A stretch of 63,974 nt of DNA, the filler included, from Octopus bimaculoides (lineage: Eukaryota), in NCBI RefSeq assembly GCF_001194135.2. It is 6 parts of 5 records of this genome, joined end to end, with 100 filler letters (N's around TTAATTAATTAA, not from the genome) between each part and the next. Parts side by side here need not be neighbours in the genome. Positions count along the whole stretch, not along the records: positions 15,138 to 30,647 come from NC_068991.1; 5 more parts are not named here. One strand, written 5' to 3'. Positions 9,600 to 24,875 of this stretch are shown here, piece after piece. The notes beneath the pieces are model-generated. The model ran no database searches, was not told the origin of the DNA, and saw nothing but the letters and a program-made list of their open reading frames with translations. The position numbers and the translations under genes are program-made. Numbering within the stretch: position 1 is the first letter of the stretch; each line of letters starts with the position of its first letter.

Positions 9600-11035
9600 G
9601 CGAATCCCTAAAACTCGAGAACTACGCAACCAATTTCATTCAAATTTTACACTTGCCTTACTTAGGGTTCCAGTTGTGTTTTAGTCAAAAAAAATTATTA
9701 ACTTCTTGCAGAGTTCGAGCACACGGCAACATAATATCTCCTCCACTATTTAAGTTTTACGTGTCAAAAGTGAAACAAAAACACTCATGTCAAATACTTT
9801 CACTTTAAAAATGAAACTATTCCACTAACTGAAACAATCATATTTCGATACTGTAGTGACAGATACTTTCACAGAGAGAGAAAGGGAGAAAGAGAGAGAC
9901 AGNNNNNNNNNNNNNNNNNNNNNNNNNNNNNNNNNNNNNNNNNNNNNNNNNNNNNNNNNNNNNNNNNNNNNNNNNNNNNNNNNNNNNNNNNNNNNNNNNN
10001 NNNNNNNNNNNNNNNNNNNNNNNNNNNNNNNNNNNNNNNNNNNNNNNNNNNNNNNNNNNNNNNNNNNNNNNNNNNNNNNNNNNNNNNNNNNNNNNNNNNN
10101 NNNNNNNNNNNNNNNNNNNNNNNNNNNNNNNNNNNNNNNNNNNNNNNNNNNNNNNNNNNNNNNNNNNNNNNNNNNNNNNNNNNNNNNNNNNNNNNNNNNN
10201 NNNNNNNNNNNNNNNNNNNNNNNNNNNNNNNNNNNNNNNNNNNNNNNNNNNNNNNNNNNNNNNNNNNNNNNNNNNNNNNNNNNNNNNNNNNNNNNNNNNN
10301 NNNNNNNNNNNNNNNNNNNNNNNNNNNNNNNNNNNNNNNNNNNNNNNNNNNNNNNNNNNNNNNNNNNNNNNNNNNNNNNNNNNNNNNNNNNNNNNNNNNN
10401 NNNNNNNNNNNNNNNNNNNNNNNNNNNNNNNNNNNNNNNNNNNNNNNNNNNNNNNNNNNNNNNNNNNNNNNNNNNNNNNNNNNNNNNNNNNNNNNNNNNN
10501 NNNNNNNNNNNNNNNNNNNNNNNNNNNNNNNNNNNNNNNNNNNNNNNNNNNNNNNNNNNNNNNNNNNNNNNNNNNNNNNNNNNNNNNNNNNNNNNNNNNN
10601 NNNNNNNNNNNNNNNNNNNNNNNNNNNNNNNNNNNCGTGTGACTTTTGCCATGTCCATAAACAAATATCAGGGTCAAACACTGTCTGTAGCTGGTCTTCT
10701 CTTGGAAGAGCCCTGCTTCTCACATGGACAACTGTATGTTGGCTTCTCAAGAGTGGGCAGCAACAAAAAACCTATTTGTATATGCTCCACAAGGGAAAAC
10801 AAGGAACATAGTTTACAATGAGGTGTTATAATCACAAGAAAGTATGTACATGATCACCTTCTTTTACGAAACTTCATTGACTTTCATATATTTATATTGA
10901 TATACATATATATACGTGTGTTTAGGTGCGTGTGTGTATATACATCTCTATATATAAAGATGATGCGTAATCTAGACGGCGTTTTTAGATTTCATTATTC
11001 TCTTTAACCCGGGCAACGCCGGGTATTTCTGCTAG
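9527..11035 (+). mobile_element. Non-autonomous Helitron with intact termini and a PIF1-helicase C-terminal remnant
   Basis: 5' A|TCTATATATA at 9527; 3' hairpin cccgg-gcaacg-ccggg (11008-11023) then CTAG|T at 11032-11036; 10636-10820 encodes FAMSINKYQGQTL...PCFSHGQLYVGFSRV. Confidence 0.9.
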
Positions 11036-15701: not shown

Positions 15702-16700
15702 TAAGGATTACCGAGACTGAGGCACAACTAGATGAAACAGAAAAACCCATGGTGAAAGTAAAACAAATAAAAGCAAAAACTAACTCAAATGGAATCTTAG
15801 ATGGGGTGTAAAGTATTACATGATAAATACCCTACAAGGGCCAGTGATTCTGATGTTACAGATGTGACCCATCAGTGGCTGTCTGCATCTGGACTAAAAT
15901 CAAAAACAAGATCAATGACTGCCCATTAGAAATGACCAACCCAACATTCTTAAAAATGGTGCTGATTCTTCCTGTTACTTCTGTGCTACAACCAGAGACA
16001 CAACTGATCACTTCATCTTTGGCTGCTCTGTTTTAGCCTCAAGTGAGTATACTAATTGCCATGATAGACTTGGTCAGTATTTGCACAGAATCTTATACCA
16101 GAAGTTTGCATTCCCATATCAGAACTAGTGGGAATATAAGCCAGACAAAGTTGTAGAAAATAAAGACATCACTATAGTTAAGGACTTTAGTTTCCGAACT
16201 GATTGAACTGTTCAAACCAAGAGACTAGATATTGTGATGAAAAATCACATTGTCAAAACCGGTGTTCATAGACAGACTGTAACACCTTTGTGAAAAAGTT
16301 TGAAAAGTTAAATAAATACAACCATGAAATGGAGCTCTCGAAAATGTGGCACCTATGAATGACAACTGTAGCTGTGATCATCAAAACTTTGGGGATTATA
16401 TCAAAAGGCGTTCTTAAAAACGATGATCCATTACCAGGACACCCAGAATTGTTCTTATGAATACAGCTCACTGTCATTGTGAGAATATCTAAATCTTTTA
16501 AAAACCTTTCAAAATCTCAAATATCACACCAAACTTTTAATGGAATCTTAATTCTCAGTATGTGGTCACCTTTTTCTGACATACATCATTACTACTCATA
16601 AATAATACTCACAGTAAAACATCTAACTTGCTATTTCTTGAGGTCTCTGGGTGAGATATGAAATAACTTATGCAACAACAATGAAAATAGCAATAACAAT
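15702..16700 (+). mobile_element. 5'-truncated R4/Dong-clade element: CCHC knuckle, restriction-like endonuclease and 3' UTR
   Basis: HQWLSASGLKSKT; C-x2-C-x8-H-x4-C (CYFCATTRDTTDHFIFGC, 15973-16026); RTD*TVQTKRLDIV; EKLNKY...MW...LGII; 3' UTR matches the 14.7-14.9 kb copy; ends in degenerate AAT repeats. Confidence 0.88.
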
Positions 16701-17692
16701 CCTTTCCATTATAAGTACAATCAGAAGAGCTAGAAAACCAAATTTTAGGGGTTAACATAATCATGAAAATTTTTAGCCATCCTAGGTCATGTAGGACCTG
16801 TGAAATGGTTAAGTTGATTACATTGATATAGAAGACAGTTAACCAAGGTACCATGCAATGGAACTAAACCCTGAACCATGTGGTTGGGAAGCAAGCTTCT
16901 TACCACACAGCCATGCCTGCAGCTTCCACAGTTTTTGCATTCAGAATTTAACTCAAAAAGTATTGGTCACCTAAAGGTACTTGCTCAAGTCGCTATGTAG
17001 TGTGGTTTGAAGCAGGAACCAAGTTAATGTGAATAAACTTCTTGACCACACAGACGTATCTTCTGTAGTTGTTTATGAATTGATCAGTTTGTTAAATTGA
17101 TGTTGTTGTTGCTGTTCATTTGCAACTGATTTTGTCAGCCATTGTACTAACATATATATATAAATATATATATNNNNNNNNNNNNNNNNNNNNNNNNNNN
17201 NNNNNNNNNNNNNNNNNNNNNNNNNNNNNNNNNNNNNNNNNNNNNNNNNNNNNNNNNNNNNNNNNNNNNNNNNNNNNNNNNNNNNNNNNNNNNNNNNNNN
17301 NNNNNNNNNNNNNNNNNNNNNNNNNNNNNNNNNNNNNNNNNNNNNNNNNNNNNNNNNNNNNNNNNNNNNNNNNNNNNNNNNNNNNNNNNNNNNNNNNNNN
17401 NNNNNNNNNNNNNNNNNNNNNNNNNNNNNNNNNNNNNNNNNNNNNNNNNNNNNNNNNNNNNNNNNNNNNNNNNNNNNNNNNNNNNNNNATATATGATCCG
17501 CCGGTGGCAGATGGATGCACTCAACAGGTCGGGTGCTCCCGTGTACGAAAGTCGGCAGCATCTTTGGCCCGGTCTACTGAGGCGACACGGCTCCTCAGCC
17601 CGGTCCGGGGGTGTTCCTGGCGAAAAGTGGCCCCATCCCCAAGTACAACAACATATATATAATTCGTTCTCATTACACACATACATATACAC

Positions 17693-17736
<44 letters not shown>

Positions 17737-18803
17737 TTATATACTTATATAAAATATATATAAATGTATGTATATACGTATGTACATATATATATGTATA
17801 TAAAAATATATGTGTGTATGTGTATCTATACATATATACATATATATATATATACACAGACATATATGTATATAAAGATATATATAGATATATATGTATG
17901 TATGCATGTCTATATATACATGCATACATATATATATGTGTGTGTGTGTATGCATGAATATATATACATATGAATACACACGCATATATCAATGCTAAAA
18001 CCAAACCAATAAGAAATCTAAGAACAATAGCAACAACCACAACAACAGCAGCAACAATAGTAGTAGCAGCAGCAGCATATGCAGCAGTTGAAAAACAACA
18101 ATAACAACAACCTGGGTGGACTAATGGTGGTTGTAAAGTTAACTACTTGATCAACAGTGGGAGAAGTCATTCAACCATAACATGTCCTGGCTTTTATGGA
18201 ATAATTACACCATCATATTCTAGCCTCCATTACACCAGCCATATCATATATTCACTATATACACCCACCTCTTTGTAAACTATATANNNNNNNNNNNNNN
18301 NNNNNNNNNNNNNNNNNNNNNNNNNNNNNNNNNNNNNNNNNNNNNNNNNNNNNNNNNNNNNNNNNNNNNNNNNNNNNNNNNNNNNNNNNNNNNNNNNNNN
18401 NNNNNNNNNNNNNNNNNNNNNNNNNNNNNNNNNNNNNNNNNNNNNNNNNNNNNNNNNNNNNNNNNNNNNNNNNNNNNNNNNNNNNNNNNNNNNNNNNNNN
18501 NNNNNNNNNNNNNNNNNNNNNNNNNNNNNNNNNNNNNNNNNNNNNNNNNNNNNNNNNNNNNNNNNNNNNNNNNNNNNNNNNNNNNNNNATATATATATAT
18601 ATATATACGTGTGTGCGTGTGCATGTATATTTGTCAGGATCTATTTCTCACAAATCAAAACTGGTAGTAAACCAAACCATACAGTTTGATGCTGTCTTCA
18701 CAACACTGAGCCCAAGCTGAAGTATTAGCAACTTACCTGCAAACACACTGACATATTCACATACACACACGTACAAATAACAGATAGATAGACTGATAGA
18801 TAG

Positions 18804-19039: not shown

Positions 19040-20718
19040 CATACATACATACATACATACATACACATGTTTGGAGATGCAAACAGAAAAAATAGAACAC
19101 AAAACATGTGTATATATATATATATGTATNNNNNNNNNNNNNNNNNNNNNNNNNNNNNNNNNNNNNNNNNNNNNNNNNNNNNNNNNNNNNNNNNNNNNNN
19201 NNNNNNNNNNNNNNNNNNNNNNNNNNNNNNNNNNNNNNNNNNNNNNNNNNNNNNNNNNNNNNNNNNNNNNNNNNNNNNNNNNNNNNNNNNNNNNNNNNNN
19301 NNNNNNNNNNNNNNNNNNNNNNNNNNNNNNNNNNNNNNNNNNNNNNNNNNNNNNNNNNNNNNNNNNNNNNNNNNNNNNNNNNNNNNNNNNNNNNNNNNNN
19401 NNNNNNNNNNNNNNNNNNNNNNNNNNNNNNNNNNNNNNNNNNNNNNNNNNNNNNNNNNNNNNNNNNNNNNNNNNNNNNNNNNNNNNNNNNNNNNNNNNNN
19501 NNNNNNNNNNNNNNNNNNNNNNNNNNNNNNNNNNNNNNNNNNNNNNNNNNNNNNNNNNNNNNNNNNNNNNNNNNNNNNNNNNNNNNNNNNNNNNNNNNNN
19601 NNNNNNNNNNNNNNNNNNNNNNNNNNNNNNNNNNNNNNNNNNNNNNNNNNNNNNNNNNNNNNNNNNNNNNNNNNNNNNNNNNNNNNNNNNNNNNNNNNNN
19701 NNNNNNNNNTATATTTATATATATATATATATAATTTAGAGAAAAGAACCAAAGTTCATAAACTCATCCATGAAAATCCAGTCACATATAGAAATATTTA
19801 ATAAGTAAATACACTAAAAAGAACTATAATAAAATACAAAGTAATAATCATAAAATAATATATATATATATATATATATGCACACACATACACACATGCA
19901 TGTGTAACAAGATGCAAAATTAATACTACTCAGATGAAACACCTATCACTAATGATTCTAATTTTAACCTGATGAGTTCAACAGTTCAAATAGAGTTTTA
20001 CAGCCAGATGGAGATGAAGTTACAGAACATCATATCTCTTCCAACAACAACCAAGACTGTTAGGAGTTTGGTAGACATCAGTCGCAGATAGTGTATACCG
20101 TCTATCTACCATCAGTGATATTGGATTTGGCCTGGAGGGAGCAGTGAGAGTGAAAGTGAGAGAGAGAGACACAGGGACATAACTGTGGTCAACAGATATT
20201 ATTGCATATGGTCAGCATAAAACGCACATAGATACTGGTAAATACTGGACGTCTTAATAGGTTGACTCTTGGACAAAACACTGGATATAACTTCAGATAC
20301 ATTTGAGGACAATTAATAAAATTAGAGGACAGTCTTTGCTGATTGGCAACGCTATAGAAATTTAATGCAGCAGGATACAAGGAAACACAGGAGTTAGCTG
20401 AAGGGGTGTACTGAATGTAGGAACTGAAAGATATCAGATGTGATGGCGCTTGGAAAATAATAAATAGGTAACTTTTTAATTCAAATGTATATACACATGC
20501 ACACATATGCTATACCCACATACACTCATACACATGTGCAGAGACACATACACATAGCCACATGTATATGCATGTGTAAATGCATATATGCACAAATACA
20601 TTTATCTCTGTGCATGTATGTATATAGATATGTATTGTGTGTGTGTGTATGTTCTTTAGTTTGTGTAAACCATCGTGGCTAAGACCAAGCCGGAGCCCAG
20701 CCTTTACATACATGCACG

Positions 20719-20754
<36 letters not shown>

Positions 20755-21330
20755 TATACATATATATACACATATATATATAATCACATACATACAAACA
20801 CACACACACACACAAAAAAAAGGGCACAATTCAAGGTAAAGTATTCAATAATAGAGTGCATGAANNNNNNNNNNNNNNNNNNNNNNNNNNNNNNNNNNNN
20901 NNNNNNNNNNNNNNNNNNNNNNNNNNNNNNNNNNNNNNNNNNNNNNNNNNNNNNNNNNNNNNNNNNNNNNNNNNNNNNNNNNNNNNNNNNNNNNNNNNNN
21001 NNNNNNNNNNNNNNNNNNNNNNNNNNNNNNNNNNNNNNNNNNNNNNNNNNNNNNNNNNNNNNNNNNNNNNNNNNNNNNNNNNNACATACACACACACACA
21101 CACACTCACACACATACACTCACACACACAAATATACATATATATACACATATATATATAATCACATACATACATACATACATACATACATACATACATA
21201 CATACATACATACACATATATATAATATATATGGGCTGTCACTGGGTGTGAACATGCATTCAGCAAATACATATTTGTGTACATGTGTGTACATTTGTTT
21301 CAGTTTGAATGTATATATATGTGTCTGTAC

Positions 21331-22477: not shown

Positions 22478-23015
22478 CATCATCATCATCATCGTTTAAC
22501 GTACGCTTTCCATGCTAGCATGGGTTGGACGATTTGGCTGAGGACTGGTGAACCAGATGGCTACACCAGGCTCCAATCTGATTTGGCAGAGTTTCTACAG
22601 CTGGATGCCCTTCCTAACGCCAACCACTCCGAGAGTGTGGTGGGTGCTTTTACCACCAGCACGAAGGCCAGTCAGGCGGTACTGGCAATGACCACGCTCA
22701 AAATGGTGTATTTTACATGCCACCTGCACAGGAGCCAGTCCAGGGGCACTGGCATTGATCTCGCCCAAATGTCTTTACACATGCCACCGGCACAAGTGCC
22801 AGGAAGGCGACGCTGGGCACAGGTGCCATCATGATTTCGCTTGCCCCAACAGGTCTTCGCAAGCCAAGTTTCATGTCCAATGAAGGNNNNNNNNNNCCAA
22901 CAGGTCTTCGCAAGCCAAGTTTCATGTCCAATGAAGGAGACGACGTTGGCATGGGTGCCAGTCGTCAAATTTAGTTCGATTTCGATTTCACTTGACTCAA
23001 CAGGTCTTCGCAAGC
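22478..23015 (-). mobile_element. (GAT)n-tailed interspersed repeat (RTE-type 3' end or RTE-dependent SINE)
   Basis: (cat)n-cgtttaacgt..ctttccatgctagcatgggttggac...agctggatgcccttcctaacgccaacc; further copies at about 31850, 36600, 37320, 40130, 44455, 46100 and 61883. Confidence 0.75.
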
Positions 23016-24139
23016 GACATTTACAAATATGTGATAGTAGTGTTCACATTAGTATCTTATGTTTTTTGTTGTTTTAACATTAATTTTTTTTTTATCGATG
23101 TTCTAAGAATTTATAAACTTTGAGAGAATGTGAAATAATTCCTTTTGGGAACTATGTTTCTTGAAGTTTATAAATAATAGCATGTAAATACTGGGTTAAA
23201 AAAACGGATAGAAAAAGTTGAGGGCTATTTGTGGGTCTCAAAACCAATTCTCCTGTCAACATGACAGGCATTGTACCACTGGACCAAAACAATCCTTTGA
23301 ATTTCTCTGTCCATTTTAGGAACTTTATTCTTATCAGAAAGAATTGTATGTTATTGATGCCATGTTTACAGGAGATGTGGATTTGAGTCCCATAGGCAGC
23401 CTTTAACTTTTTCTATCCAAGGGCTTTTTGACCAAATATTTACATACTATTATCTATAGCTTTATTTGCTTCAAGATACACCGTTCCAAAAAAGAACTTC
23501 TTTGTGTTTTTTTTTTATTTTTTACATGTAATTATTATATACTAGCAGGACCCGTGAATATTTCACAGAATTAATAGTAAACTTAATGGGTTCTTTCTGA
23601 AAACTTTATACAAAAAACCTGAAAGCATAGCCTGTGTTGTGTCTGTATCAAAAGATAGTCACTCATCTGTTAATCACTGAAAAGTGAAGGAAATTGGAAT
23701 ATGATGATTACTTAATGCACTTTATATATATATACTTGTTATACTTTATGCACAATTTTATAGACTCAATACACAGCACACTCTCTCTTTCCCTCTCACT
23801 CTTCACCTTACCTTCTTTTTCTCACTCCTTTTTCTTTCACTCTTCGCTTTTCCCTTCAACTAATCACGTGAAAGCGTAACAGATGGGCTAAGTAACAGAG
23901 TGACAAGCAGAATTATTATATATATATTCATTCTAAAAATTTAATGAAAGACATATGGAAATGGCCAGTACAGCCTGAATCAAACAGCTTCTCTGAAAAT
24001 GTTGATGCTGGCTGAACTAGAAGCCACAACTGGGAAAAGGTACATGCTCTTAGTAATCAGGATAGTCCAGGATTGTTGAAGATTCCTGATTTCACCTAAG
24101 TGTTTCCATAATTTTTTCTTTTTTTACTTTCTTTATCAG

Positions 24140-24200
24140 GTAACAGTGAAAAAGTGAAAAATTAACAGAGGTCCGTATAAAAAAAAGAAAACTCTCAATG
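24140..24200 (+). other. 5' UTR part of the first coding exon of the globin gene, after a splice acceptor
   Basis: Long polypyrimidine tract ttttttctttttttactttctttatcAG (AG 24138-24139); in-frame TAA (24141) and TGA (24147) upstream of the ATGs. Confidence 0.65.
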
Positions 24201-24367
24201 ATGGGATGTGGACTAAGTTTCAAATCAGAAAAACCCAAAAAGAAACAAAAGGAAGTCACCTCCAATACATGCACTATATTGTCTGATAGACAAAATCTGT
24301 TAATTAGAGAAACATGGTCTATCATTCAGGACGAAATACTTACCATTGGTGTATATATTTATTACAG
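24201..24367 (+). CDS. First coding exon of an N-acylated globin (globin X-like); partial CDS ending at the B12.2 intron
   Basis: MGCGLSFKSEKPKKKQKEVTSNTCTILSDRQNLLIRETWSIIQDEILTIGVYIYY(R). The spacing L-x11-W-x10-G-x5-R equals myoglobin Leu2/TrpA12/GlyB6/ArgB12. The donor AG|gtaaaa splits the B12 codon in phase 2 (ancestral globin intron). An in-frame ATG at 24198 has weaker context. Confidence 0.88.
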
Positions 24368-24549
24368 GTAAAACACATTTCTTGTTTGTGAGTTACATTT
24401 TTATGTAGCTTATATGGTTTTAATGTATTTCACCAGTTTTTGTGTGGTCATCGTTGGTTGTTTTTCTTTAATGTGTATCTTCATCTGTTAAGTGCAGTCA
24501 TCGAATATATATGTTTATGCGTGTGTGTGTGTGTGTGTGAGCGTGTGTG

Positions 24550-24622
<73 letters not shown>

Positions 24623-24644
24623 CATTTATATTTTACTTGTTTCA

Positions 24645-24875
24645 GGCGGTGAGCTGGCAGAATCGTTTGCATGCCGAGCGAAATGCTTAACGGTATTTCG
24701 TCTGCTGTTACATTCTGAGTTCAAATTCCGCCGAGGTCAACTTTGCCTTTCATCCTTTTGGGGTCGATTAAATAAGTACCAGTTACGCACTGGGGTCGAT
24801 GTAATCGATTTAATCCCTTCGTCTGTCCTTGTTTGTCCCCTCTATATTTAGCCCCTTGTGGGCTATAAAGAAATA
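24645..24875 (+). mobile_element. Full-length SINE, family A (ggcggtgagctggcag head, tail type 1), with 18-bp TSD
   Basis: B-box-like gagttcaaattcc; central gaggtcaactttgcctttcatcc...aagtaccag; TSD tatattttacttgtttca at 24627-24644 and 24876-24893; inserted into another SINE. Confidence 0.9.

What the first reader, a model, noticed from the sequence alone, without database searches (positions are those of the whole stretch)
24201..24367. Membrane-targeted (myristoyl/palmitoyl) globin in a haemocyanin-using animal
Seen in sequence: MGCGLS followed by a polybasic KSEKPKKKQK stretch, then globin helices A-B colinear with myoglobin, and a phase-2 intron at B12. Established: Gly2 with Ser6 is the N-myristoyltransferase consensus, Cys3 is the palmitoylation site in globin X and related invertebrate globins, and B12.2 is the ancestral globin intron. 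Cephalopods transport O2 with haemocyanin. Inference: a membrane-bound globin for redox protection or signalling. This exon is absent from the supplied ORF track and is easily missed.
Basis: partly seen in the sequence, partly recalled or inferred. Interest (0 to 1): 0.8.

Follow-up and report, generated by a model that had tools for sequence, protein, structure and literature searches.

The report
Known octopus membrane-anchored globin, first exon

Summary
Window 24201-24365 encodes MGCGLSFKSEKPKKKQKEV...GVYIYY, followed by AG|GTAAAA, a phase-2 donor at 24367/24368.

The peptide is 100% identical to residues 2-56 of RefSeq XP_014784435.1 ("neuroglobin-like", Octopus bimaculoides). Song et al. 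2020 (PMC7771090) list that protein, place it in their spiralian "Sp-gb" clade, and score it positive for N-myristoylation plus palmitoylation.

- **Globin identity:** the full protein matches Pfam Globin (E=4e-12). PheCD1, HisE7 and HisF8 are invariant across 13 aligned family members. An AlphaFold model of the 93%-identical O. sinensis orthologue matches neuroglobin and cytoglobin folds.
- **Gene structure:** the O. sinensis gene has three coding exons, with introns at B12.2 (10.4 kb) and G7.0 (11.6 kb) only. There is no E10.2 or H10.0 intron, so it is not globin X.
- **Splicing:** a spliced transcript from another cephalopod (SRR6517992) starts at MGCGFSFKS and crosses the same junction.
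- **What is missing here:** exons 2 and 3 lie beyond the piece.
- **Family context:** MGC N-termini are the norm among relatives.

One open point is an extra in-frame ATG at 24198 (MMGCG). If translation starts there, Gly2 would not be exposed and the protein would not be myristoylated.

Verdict: real, correctly interpreted in outline, already known. Low interest.

The parts
24201..24367 (+). Coding part of the first coding exon of the Octopus bimaculoides Sp-gb globin gene (XP_014784435.1 / A0A0L8G4T2), from the Gly2-exposing ATG to the last exon base. 55 codons plus 2 bases of the split Ser56 (B12) codon.
   Evidence: (100% identity to the published protein), and 30 (blastn of the orthologous transcript L001 756-922 aligns to exactly 24201-24367).
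24198..24200 (+). Additional in-frame ATG directly upstream. It is the start codon used by the RefSeq model (MMGCG...). Its context is weak: T at -3, A at +4.
   Evidence: It is conserved in O. sinensis but corresponds to ACC in the SRR6517992 transcript.
24201..24221 (+). Dual-acylation motif M-G-C-G-L-S-F: Gly2 myristoylation site, Cys3 palmitoylation site, Ser6. This ATG has A at -3 and G at +4.
   Evidence: fits the myristoylation pattern. (Song et al. predictions: myristoylation, palmitoylation, 'yes'). (MGCxxS conserved in relatives).
24222..24251 (+). Polybasic stretch KSEKPKKKQK (residues 8-17). It is identical in O. sinensis but not conserved in the more distant cephalopod transcript (KSQEMEKRQK).
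24279..24367 (+). Globin helix A and the first half of helix B (LSDRQNLLIRETWSIIQDEILTIGVYIYYS), with invariant Trp A12 (W39) and Gly B6 (G50).
   Evidence: alignment to cytoglobin and neuroglobin starts here; invariant W and G; helix from residue 30 in the orthologue model.
24368..30647 (+). 5' part of intron 1 (B12.2, phase 2), with the GT donor at 24368-24369. It runs off the end of the piece. It contains a (GT)50 microsatellite, SINE-like repeats and a transposase relic. Exon 2 is not in the piece.
   Evidence: GTAAAA. (no further exon match). (the orthologous intron is 10,436 bp). (colinear with the O. sinensis intron only as far as L002 13614; exon 2 is at 20607).
24147..24149 (+). In-frame TGA 48 nt upstream of the first ATG. 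There is no ATG between it and 24198, so the ATG pair is the first possible start in this frame.
   Evidence: stop-to-stop ORF begins at 24150.

Best explanation
Window 24198/24201-24367 is the first coding exon of the Octopus bimaculoides globin gene annotated as XP_014784435.1 ('neuroglobin-like'). Song et al. 2020 place it in the spiralian-specific 'Sp-gb' globin clade.

The exon encodes three things: a roughly 25-residue disordered N-terminal extension, globin helix A, and half of helix B. [quoted passage not shown] In the sister species these lie about 10 kb and about 22 kb downstream, outside this piece.

Inferred mechanism:
1. Translation starts at the second, strong-context ATG (24201).
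2. Methionine aminopeptidase exposes Gly2, and N-myristoyltransferase attaches myristate co-translationally.
3. Cys3 is then palmitoylated.
4. The lipids, helped in Octopus by the Lys-rich stretch, hold a monomeric haem globin with a His at E7 on the cytoplasmic face of a membrane.
5. By analogy with zebrafish globin X and the C. elegans myristoylated globins, it would serve redox signalling or protection of membrane lipids rather than bulk O2 transport.

Shown: the gene's identity, the exon boundary, the globin fold and key residues, and family-wide conservation of the MGC motif. Inferred: which start site is used, actual lipidation, membrane localisation, possible hexacoordination, and physiological role.
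For: - **Identity:** 100% match of 24198-24365 to residues 1-56 of the published protein. The UniProt model A0A0L8G4T2 starts MGCGLS.
- **Globin:** Pfam PF00042 E=4e-12, 47 bits against a cut-off of 22. Cytoglobin 6q6p E=1.3e-10 over residues 26-171, with REYF/QYF, LERHA/LRKHA and GGKH/GKAH aligned. W(A12), G(B6), F(CD1), H(E7) and H(F8) are invariant in 13 family members.
- **Fold:** AlphaFold model of the 93%-identical orthologue has core pLDDT above 90, with residues 1-24 below 50. Best fold matches are neuroglobin 1oj6 (TM 0.84 on the target), a tardigrade hexacoordinate globin and cytoglobin.
- **Splicing:** the O. sinensis gene has GT..AG introns after 170 nt (phase 2) and after 405 nt (phase 0, KPYMIR|RLWP = G7.0). 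The Logan transcript L001 from SRR6517992 is colinear across the same junction.
- **Acylation motif:** it fits the consensus and was predicted positive by Song et al.. All seven named mollusc relatives start MGCxxS. Of 80 single-domain-sized representatives, 58 start MG and 37 start MGC. The distant cephalopod transcript has a single ACC-ATG-G start giving MGCGFSFKS.
- **Functional analogy:** in zebrafish GbX both sites are required for membrane localisation, and that protein is hexacoordinate (PMC3176823). C. elegans has myristoylated redox-signalling globins (abstracts).
Against: - No experimental evidence of lipidation, localisation or haem chemistry exists for this protein or any cephalopod globin that I could find.
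- RefSeq starts both Octopus models at the upstream ATG (MMGCG). A protein made from it would keep Met1 and could not be myristoylated (established MetAP specificity, my knowledge).
- No transcript from O. bimaculoides itself was examined. Expression is shown only by a transcript of an unidentified related cephalopod.
- The polybasic stretch is not conserved outside Octopus.
- The two Octopus species are about 90-95% identical in flanking non-coding DNA too, so conservation does not by itself mark the exon.
Confidence: 0.85

Rival explanations
1. It is a cephalopod orthologue of globin X proper, as the reader's expected intron set (E10.2, G7.0, H10.0) implies.
For: It has the same kind of N-terminal MGC dual-acylation extension as GbX. 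It is a globin with His at E7 and its fold resembles neuroglobin and cytoglobin.
Against: The O. sinensis orthologue has only B12.2 and G7.0 in its coding sequence. E10.2 is the intron that distinguishes GbX from GbX-like genes (PMC7457136). Song et al. place the protein in a spiralian-only clade separate from their other clades. The named relatives found here are all molluscs.
Confidence: 0.04
2. In Octopus the protein is made mainly from the first ATG (24198) as MMGCG.... It therefore keeps its initiator Met, is not myristoylated, and is a soluble cytoplasmic globin. On this reading the MGC motif is a relic.
For: The upstream ATG is in frame, is the first AUG a scanning ribosome would meet in this exon, and is conserved in O. 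bimaculoides and O. sinensis. RefSeq uses it.
Against: Its context is poor (T at -3, A at +4), whereas the second ATG has A at -3 and G at +4. The MGCG[LF]SFKS motif is conserved unchanged between Octopus and a cephalopod that is only about 70% identical overall and has a single ATG. The motif is the family norm. Song et al. also found MMGCD in a Pinctada globin and scored it as acylated.
Confidence: 0.12
3. It is a chance ORF or a dead pseudo-exon with no spliced product.
For: The ORF is only 57 aa. Pfam gives no hit on the peptide alone. The first word-index protein search with the short peptide returned nothing.
Against: It is identical to annotated proteins. An orthologous spliced transcript exists. 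The gene is intact with canonical splice sites in O. sinensis. The exon peptide aligns significantly to other globin N-termini.
Confidence: 0.01

Closest known systems
XP_014784435.1 'neuroglobin-like' [Octopus bimaculoides] = Obi_961126590 in Song et al. 2020 (PMC7771090), clade 'Sp-gb'; also UniProt A0A0L8G4T2_OCTBM
   Same: Identical. Residues 1-56 are encoded by window 24198-24365. It is already tabulated as predicted N-myristoylated and palmitoylated, 'yes' membrane-bound.
   Different: Nothing differs in sequence. The RefSeq model starts one Met earlier. The UniProt model starts at MGC but skips exon 2.
Octopus sinensis neuroglobin-like isoform X1 (P0001; locus L002, GCA_006345805.1 CM016869.1)
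   Same: 93% identical orthologue with an identical MMGCGLSFKSEKPKKKQKEV N-terminus and the same donor sequence.
   Different: Three amino-acid changes in exon 1. It supplies the full three-exon structure that the window lacks.
Globin X-like (GbXL) genes of arthropods and deuterostomes (Prothmann et al. 2020, PMC7457136)
   Same: Three-exon, two-intron architecture (B12.2 and G7.0). They occur in animals that rely on haemocyanin. Per Song et al.'s background section, GbX and GbX-like proteins often carry N-terminal acylation sites.
   Different: [quoted passage not shown] Orthology to GbXL was not tested here.
Zebrafish globin X (Blank et al. 2011, PMC3176823)
   Same: N-terminal extension with myristoylation and palmitoylation sites, shown there to be required for membrane targeting. 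It is hexacoordinate with a proposed non-respiratory role.
   Different: It has an extra E10.2 intron and belongs to a different clade. The octopus protein's lipidation and haem chemistry are untested.
C. elegans myristoylated globins GLB-26 and GLB-12 (PMC3520999, PMC4686822)
   Same: Membrane-tethered globins that act in redox signalling rather than O2 supply (abstracts). They are the functional model for the inferred role.
   Different: They belong to a nematode-specific globin radiation and no close sequence relationship was shown here.

Membership tests
Globin superfamily (3-on-3 fold, Pfam PF00042) | Profile match above the curated threshold | tested here: met
   Full published protein: E=4e-12, 47.1 bits against a cut-off of 22, residues 53-170. 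The window exon alone gives no hit, because the match begins only at residue 53.
Globin superfamily (3-on-3 fold, Pfam PF00042) | Phe CD1, proximal His F8 (and distal His E7) | tested here: met
   These residues align to the corresponding cytoglobin residues and are invariant in 13 family members. They lie in exon 2, outside the window.
Globin superfamily (3-on-3 fold, Pfam PF00042) | Globin fold | tested here: met
   AlphaFold model of the O. sinensis orthologue: core pLDDT above 90. Foldseek best hits are neuroglobin, cytoglobin and a tardigrade globin, target TM 0.82-0.87.
Globin superfamily (3-on-3 fold, Pfam PF00042) | Haem binding and ligand chemistry | not testable with these tools
   Needs recombinant protein and spectroscopy.
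N-terminally dual-acylated (membrane-bound) animal globins | Met-Gly start with a small uncharged residue at 3 and Ser/Thr at 6 (NMT consensus) | tested here: met
   MGCGLSF fits G-{EDRKHPFYW}-x2-[STAGCN]-{P}. Song et al.'s predictor was positive.
N-terminally dual-acylated (membrane-bound) animal globins | Cys next to the myristoylated Gly (palmitoylation site) | tested here: met
   Cys3 is present, is nearly invariant in the family alignment, and was predicted palmitoylated by Song et al..
N-terminally dual-acylated (membrane-bound) animal globins | Translation start that exposes Gly2 | tested here: inconclusive
   There are two adjacent in-frame ATGs. The second has the strong context, and the first is absent in the distant cephalopod transcript. 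Start-site usage cannot be measured here.
N-terminally dual-acylated (membrane-bound) animal globins | Demonstrated lipidation and membrane localisation | not testable with these tools
   Shown only for zebrafish GbX. No cephalopod data were found.
Globin X sensu stricto | Central intron at E10.2 in addition to B12.2 and G7.0 | tested here: not met
   Exon 2 of the O. sinensis orthologue (235 nt) runs uninterrupted from B12 to G6. The criterion comes from PMC7457136.
Globin X sensu stricto | Phylogenetic placement with GbX | not tested
   No tree was built here. Song et al. place the protein in the separate Sp-gb clade.
Sp-gb clade (Song et al. 2020) | Listed member, with relatives restricted to spiralians | tested here: met
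   It is listed as 'Sp gb'. The named relatives retrieved here are all molluscs: bivalves and gastropods. Clade monophyly itself was not re-tested.
Neuroglobin (the RefSeq name) | Orthology to vertebrate neuroglobin, including its central E-helix intron | tested here: not met
   No E-helix intron is present. Song et al. state that 'neuroglobin-like' is not a clade. Neuroglobin is only about 20% identical. That neuroglobin has an E11.0 intron is from my own knowledge.

The most novel reading that the evidence does not exclude
The tandem ATG-ATG (24198/24201) is shared by O. bimaculoides and O. sinensis but absent from a more distant cephalopod. It could work as a built-in partitioning device. 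Initiation at the weak first AUG would give an MMGC... protein that cannot be myristoylated and stays soluble. Leaky scanning to the strong second AUG would give the lipid-anchored form. One mRNA would then supply both a cytosolic and a membrane-bound globin pool. Song et al.'s table shows the same MMGC arrangement in a Pinctada globin, which hints that it may recur.
Probability: 0.12. Interest if true: 0.3.

Novelty: already known. Interest (0 to 1): 0.12.

Why it matters
As a discovery it matters little. The gene is in RefSeq and UniProt. Its dual-acylation prediction was published in 2020, and acylated non-respiratory globins are known to be widespread in invertebrates, including animals that use haemocyanin.

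Its residual value is practical. No cephalopod globin appears to have been studied experimentally, and octopus has at least three predicted dual-acylated globins. This gene, with its clear N-terminal motif, polybasic stretch and curious tandem start codon, would be a reasonable candidate for a first localisation and redox-function study, especially now that cephalopod transgenesis is being reported.

For the scan itself, it shows that short first exons (57-aa ORF) fall below a 60-aa ORF filter.

Tried and rejected
- **Pfam on the 55-aa peptide:** no hit. Explained by the Pfam Globin match beginning only at residue 53 of the full protein.
- **Word-index homology search with the 55-aa peptide:** nothing found. 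The same tool found the orthologues once the full-length sequence was used, so the first negative was a sensitivity limit, not absence.
- **Passing whole translated frames of 24368-30647 to Pfam:** Replaced by tblastn of the full protein against the window, which found no downstream exon.
- **Identifying the species of SRR6517992 from the literature:** no paper mentions it.
- **Using O. bimaculoides/O. sinensis conservation to delimit the exon or a 5'UTR exon:** uninformative, because the flanks are about as conserved as the exon.
- **Aligning the 5'UTR of the distant transcript to the window, to test whether 24139/24140 is a splice site:** no alignment upstream of the ATG.
- **TATAAAA-like run at about 24176 as a promoter:** considered and rejected. 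It lies only about 20 nt before the ATG, too close to serve a transcript that includes this start.
- **Minus-strand ORF 24092-24325 (77 aa):** considered and dismissed. It is a mechanical ORF with no support.

Full report
**1. What the sequence shows**

Window 24201-24365 reads, without a stop, MGCGLSFKSEKPKKKQKEVTSNTCTILSDRQNLLIRETWSIIQDEILTIGVYIYY. The next two bases, AG (24366-24367), are followed by GTAAAA, a good splice donor that leaves a codon split after its second base.

- A second ATG sits immediately upstream in the same frame (24198-24200), so the longest ORF begins MMGCG.
- An in-frame TGA lies at 24147-24149 with no ATG in between. The ATG pair is therefore the first possible start in this frame.
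- The mechanical ORF 24198-24371 is 57 aa, since a TAA follows the donor. That is why a 60-aa ORF track omits it.

**2. Identity**

A full-text search led to Song et al. 2020 (BMC Evol Biol, PMC7771090). [quoted passage not shown].

tblastn of that protein against the window gives 100% identity for residues 1-56 at 24198-24365 and no credible match for the rest. So the window is O. bimaculoides DNA, and the finding is the first coding exon of an annotated gene.

A homology search with the full-length protein returned four proteins:
- the O. sinensis orthologue (P0001, 227 aa, 93% identical, same MMGCGLSFKSEKPKKKQKEV start);
- the original UniProt model A0A0L8G4T2_OCTBM (P0002), which starts MGCGLS but joins exon 1 directly to the last exon;
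- an O. sinensis "isoform X3" lacking exon 1;
- a protein from a Logan assembly of SRR6517992 (P0004).

**3. It is a real globin**

The full protein matches Pfam Globin at E=4e-12 (47 bits against a cut-off of 22), covering residues 53-170. Because the match starts there, the exon peptide alone scores nothing.

Against PDB sequences the best hit is an Antarctic-fish cytoglobin (6q6p, E=1.3e-10) aligned over residues 26-171, followed by many neuroglobins. In that alignment REYF matches QYF (Phe CD1), LERHA matches LRKHA (His E7) and GGKH matches GKAH (His F8).

In an alignment of 13 family members, Trp A12, Gly B6, Phe CD1, His E7 and His F8 are invariant.

An AlphaFold model of the O. sinensis orthologue, built on nine sequences, has a confident all-helical core (pLDDT above 90 for most of residues 30-190) and low-confidence ends (1-24 and 197-227). 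Its best structural matches are human neuroglobin (1oj6, TM 0.84 normalised to the target), a tardigrade hexacoordinate haem protein and cytoglobins.

**4. Gene structure and splicing**

The O. sinensis locus (L002) holds the whole gene:

| Feature | L002 coordinates | Notes |
|---|---|---|
| Exon 1 | 10001-10170 | |
| Intron 1 | 10,436 bp | GT..AG, after 170 nt, phase 2 |
| Exon 2 | 20607-20841 | |
| Intron 2 | 11,633 bp | GT..AG, after 405 nt, phase 0 |
| Exon 3 | 32475-32753 | |

The first intron splits the Ser codon six residues after the invariant Gly B6. That is the position of Arg B12 in cytoglobin, hence B12.2. The second intron falls between KPYMIR and RLWP, four residues after the conserved Pro (G2), hence G7.0. 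The helix numbering rests on my knowledge of the beta-globin and cytoglobin conventions. No intron interrupts helices E or H.

Prothmann et al. 2020 (PMC7457136) state that GbX genes carry B12.2, E10.2 and G7.0, whereas GbX-like genes have the classical B12.2/G7.0 pair. On this criterion the octopus gene is not a GbX.

The first refutation condition, that no transcript splices at 24367, is addressed by contig L001 from SRR6517992, an 1813-nt spliced transcript of an unidentified cephalopod (about 70% protein identity). blastn aligns L001 756-922 to exactly window 24201-24367. The contig then continues into sequence matching O. sinensis exons 2 and 3.

The gene caller had started that protein at an internal Met. 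The reading frame, however, opens upstream at a single ATG in an ACC-ATG-G context, giving MGCGFSFKSQEMEKRQKD..., with an in-frame stop further upstream.

No O. bimaculoides transcript could be examined. Splicing at 24367 in this species therefore rests on the RefSeq model and on orthology.

Exons 2 and 3 are not in the piece. The window's intron is colinear with the O. sinensis intron only as far as L002 13614, about 7 kb short of exon 2.

**5. The acylation motif**

MGCGLSF fits the pattern G-{EDRKHPFYW}-x2-[STAGCN]-{P}. Song et al.'s table lists this very protein as "Sp gb", N-myristoylation MGXXXS/T at position 3 of the MM-model, palmitoylation at position 4, and "yes" for membrane-bound.

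The same table lists seven O. bimaculoides globins:
- three are scored dual-acylated (this one, XP_014768482 and XP_014785609);
- two more are scored myristoylated only.

The motif is the family norm:
- All seven named mollusc relatives retrieved (Potamilus, Nucella, Sinanodonta, Mactra, Bradybaena, Candidula, Aplysia) begin MGCxxS.
- An exhaustive phmmer search of 1.84 billion representatives gave 327 hits at E<=1e-3.
- Of the 80 single-domain-sized proteins among the best 148 hits, 58 begin MG, 37 begin MGC and 50 fit the myristoylation pattern.
- The exon peptide alone aligns from its first residue to the first residue of such relatives (E=9e-9 and 7e-5).

The Lys-rich stretch is identical in the two Octopus species but not conserved in the distant cephalopod. 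It is a lineage-specific reinforcement at most.

**6. The tandem start codon**

The first ATG has T at -3 and A at +4. The second has A at -3 and G at +4.

Myristoylation needs removal of the initiator Met. Methionine aminopeptidase performs this only when the next residue is small (established enzymology, my knowledge). A protein started at 24198 would therefore remain Met-Met-Gly and unmodified.

Three observations favour the second ATG as the functional start:
- its strong context;
- the single ATG in the distant cephalopod, where the first Octopus ATG corresponds to ACC;
- the strict conservation of MGCG[LF]SFKS.

Use of the first ATG, alone or in parallel, cannot be excluded with these tools.

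**7. How it most likely works**

- **Shown:** a three-exon globin gene whose first exon encodes a disordered N-terminal extension with a conserved dual-acylation motif, plus helices A and B.
- **Inferred from GbX:** both lipid sites are needed for membrane targeting in zebrafish GbX, which is hexacoordinate and considered non-respiratory (PMC3176823).
- **Inferred from C. elegans:** GLB-26 and GLB-12 are myristoylated globins with redox-sensing or superoxide-signalling roles (abstracts).

Putting these together, the protein is probably anchored by myristate and palmitate to the cytoplasmic face of a membrane. There it would act in redox signalling or in protecting membrane lipids, not in O2 transport. 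The presence of His E7 and the structural resemblance to hexacoordinate globins are compatible with bis-His coordination but do not prove it.

**8. Comparison with what is known, and novelty**

The gene, its protein and its predicted membrane anchoring are all on record. N-terminal acylation is described as common in several bilaterian globin clades. Globins in haemocyanin-using animals are well documented for arthropods and molluscs.

The result is nevertheless "already known". The GbX assignment and the expected extra introns are wrong.

No experimental study of a cephalopod globin turned up in the searchable literature. Function therefore remains open, but that is a gap in follow-up work, not a new observation.

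**9. Surroundings**

The rest of the piece is typical octopus non-coding DNA:
- low G+C content with assembly gaps;
- dinucleotide microsatellites;
- SINE-like dispersed repeats, one of which, together with a (GT)50 array, is inserted in intron 1 at 24560-24873 relative to O. sinensis;
- a decayed DDE transposase fragment and a decayed reverse-transcriptase zinc-finger fragment, both below Pfam thresholds.

None of these bears on the finding.

Noticed in passing
window 24198-24203: Tandem in-frame ATGATG. RefSeq starts at the first ATG (MMGCG), UniProt at the second (MGCG). The first has a weak context and is absent (ACC) in the distant cephalopod transcript L001. Song et al.'s table shows the same MMGC arrangement in a Pinctada fucata globin.
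   Followed up: partly
window 24110-24146: A long pyrimidine tract ending in CAG at 24137-24139 is followed by GTAACAG. It looks like a 3' splice acceptor, which would imply an upstream 5'UTR exon, but it also resembles a donor. It is conserved in O. sinensis. No transcript was available to decide.
   Followed up: partly
window 24521-24620 and 24644-24875; second copy 27834-28054; inverted partial copy 28999-29091: A (GT)50 microsatellite is followed by a ~230-nt SINE-like dispersed repeat just inside intron 1. This block is absent at the orthologous point of the O. sinensis intron (L002 10365/10367), so it is a species-specific insertion or deletion. Many further copies occur in L002.
   Followed up: partly
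window 23937-23941 versus L002 5758-9730: About 260 nt upstream of the ATG the two Octopus species lose colinearity. O. sinensis has roughly 4 kb there that O. bimaculoides lacks.
   Followed up: no
window 26011-26359, minus strand: Decayed Tc1/mariner-type transposase relic inside intron 1 (DDE_3, E=7e-4, below the Pfam cut-off). It is split over two frames.
   Followed up: partly
window 15919-16125, plus strand: Fragment resembling the zinc-binding C-terminal region of a reverse transcriptase (zf-RVT, E=2e-3, below the cut-off). Probably a decayed non-LTR retrotransposon.
   Followed up: partly
window 22846-22886 and 22897-22937, flanking the 10-N gap at 22887-22896: Two 41-nt stretches, 100% identical, sit on either side of a 10-N gap. 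This looks like an assembly overlap that was not merged. Larger N gaps are at 17174-17488, 18287-18588, 19130-19709 and 20865-21083.
   Followed up: no
window 28656-28976, plus strand: A 107-aa open frame containing ...HPSYDARQYNLILWNGQDGYYF..., which from memory resembles the N-terminal domain of Helitron helicases. Pfam gave no hit at E<=0.1.
   Followed up: partly
P0002 (A0A0L8G4T2_OCTBM) and P0003 (O. sinensis isoform X3): Two database gene models of this globin look defective. The UniProt model joins exon 1 straight to the last exon (...YIYYSKRLWP...), deleting the haem pocket. Isoform X3 starts at an internal Met in exon 2 and lacks helices A-D.
   Followed up: no
L001 756-788 (Logan SRR6517992 contig): The automatic gene call starts at an internal Met (MEKRQKD). 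It misses the upstream in-frame MGCGFSFKSQE start and so hides the acylation motif. Similar mis-starts appear in P0012 and P0031 (MGC preceded by 6 and 19 residues).
   Followed up: yes
P0005-P0008, P0010, P0011 (representative search): The strongest non-cephalopod hits are very long multi-domain proteins with 3-12 globin repeats (up to 1842 aa). These are polymeric globins of unknown origin related to this family.
   Followed up: no
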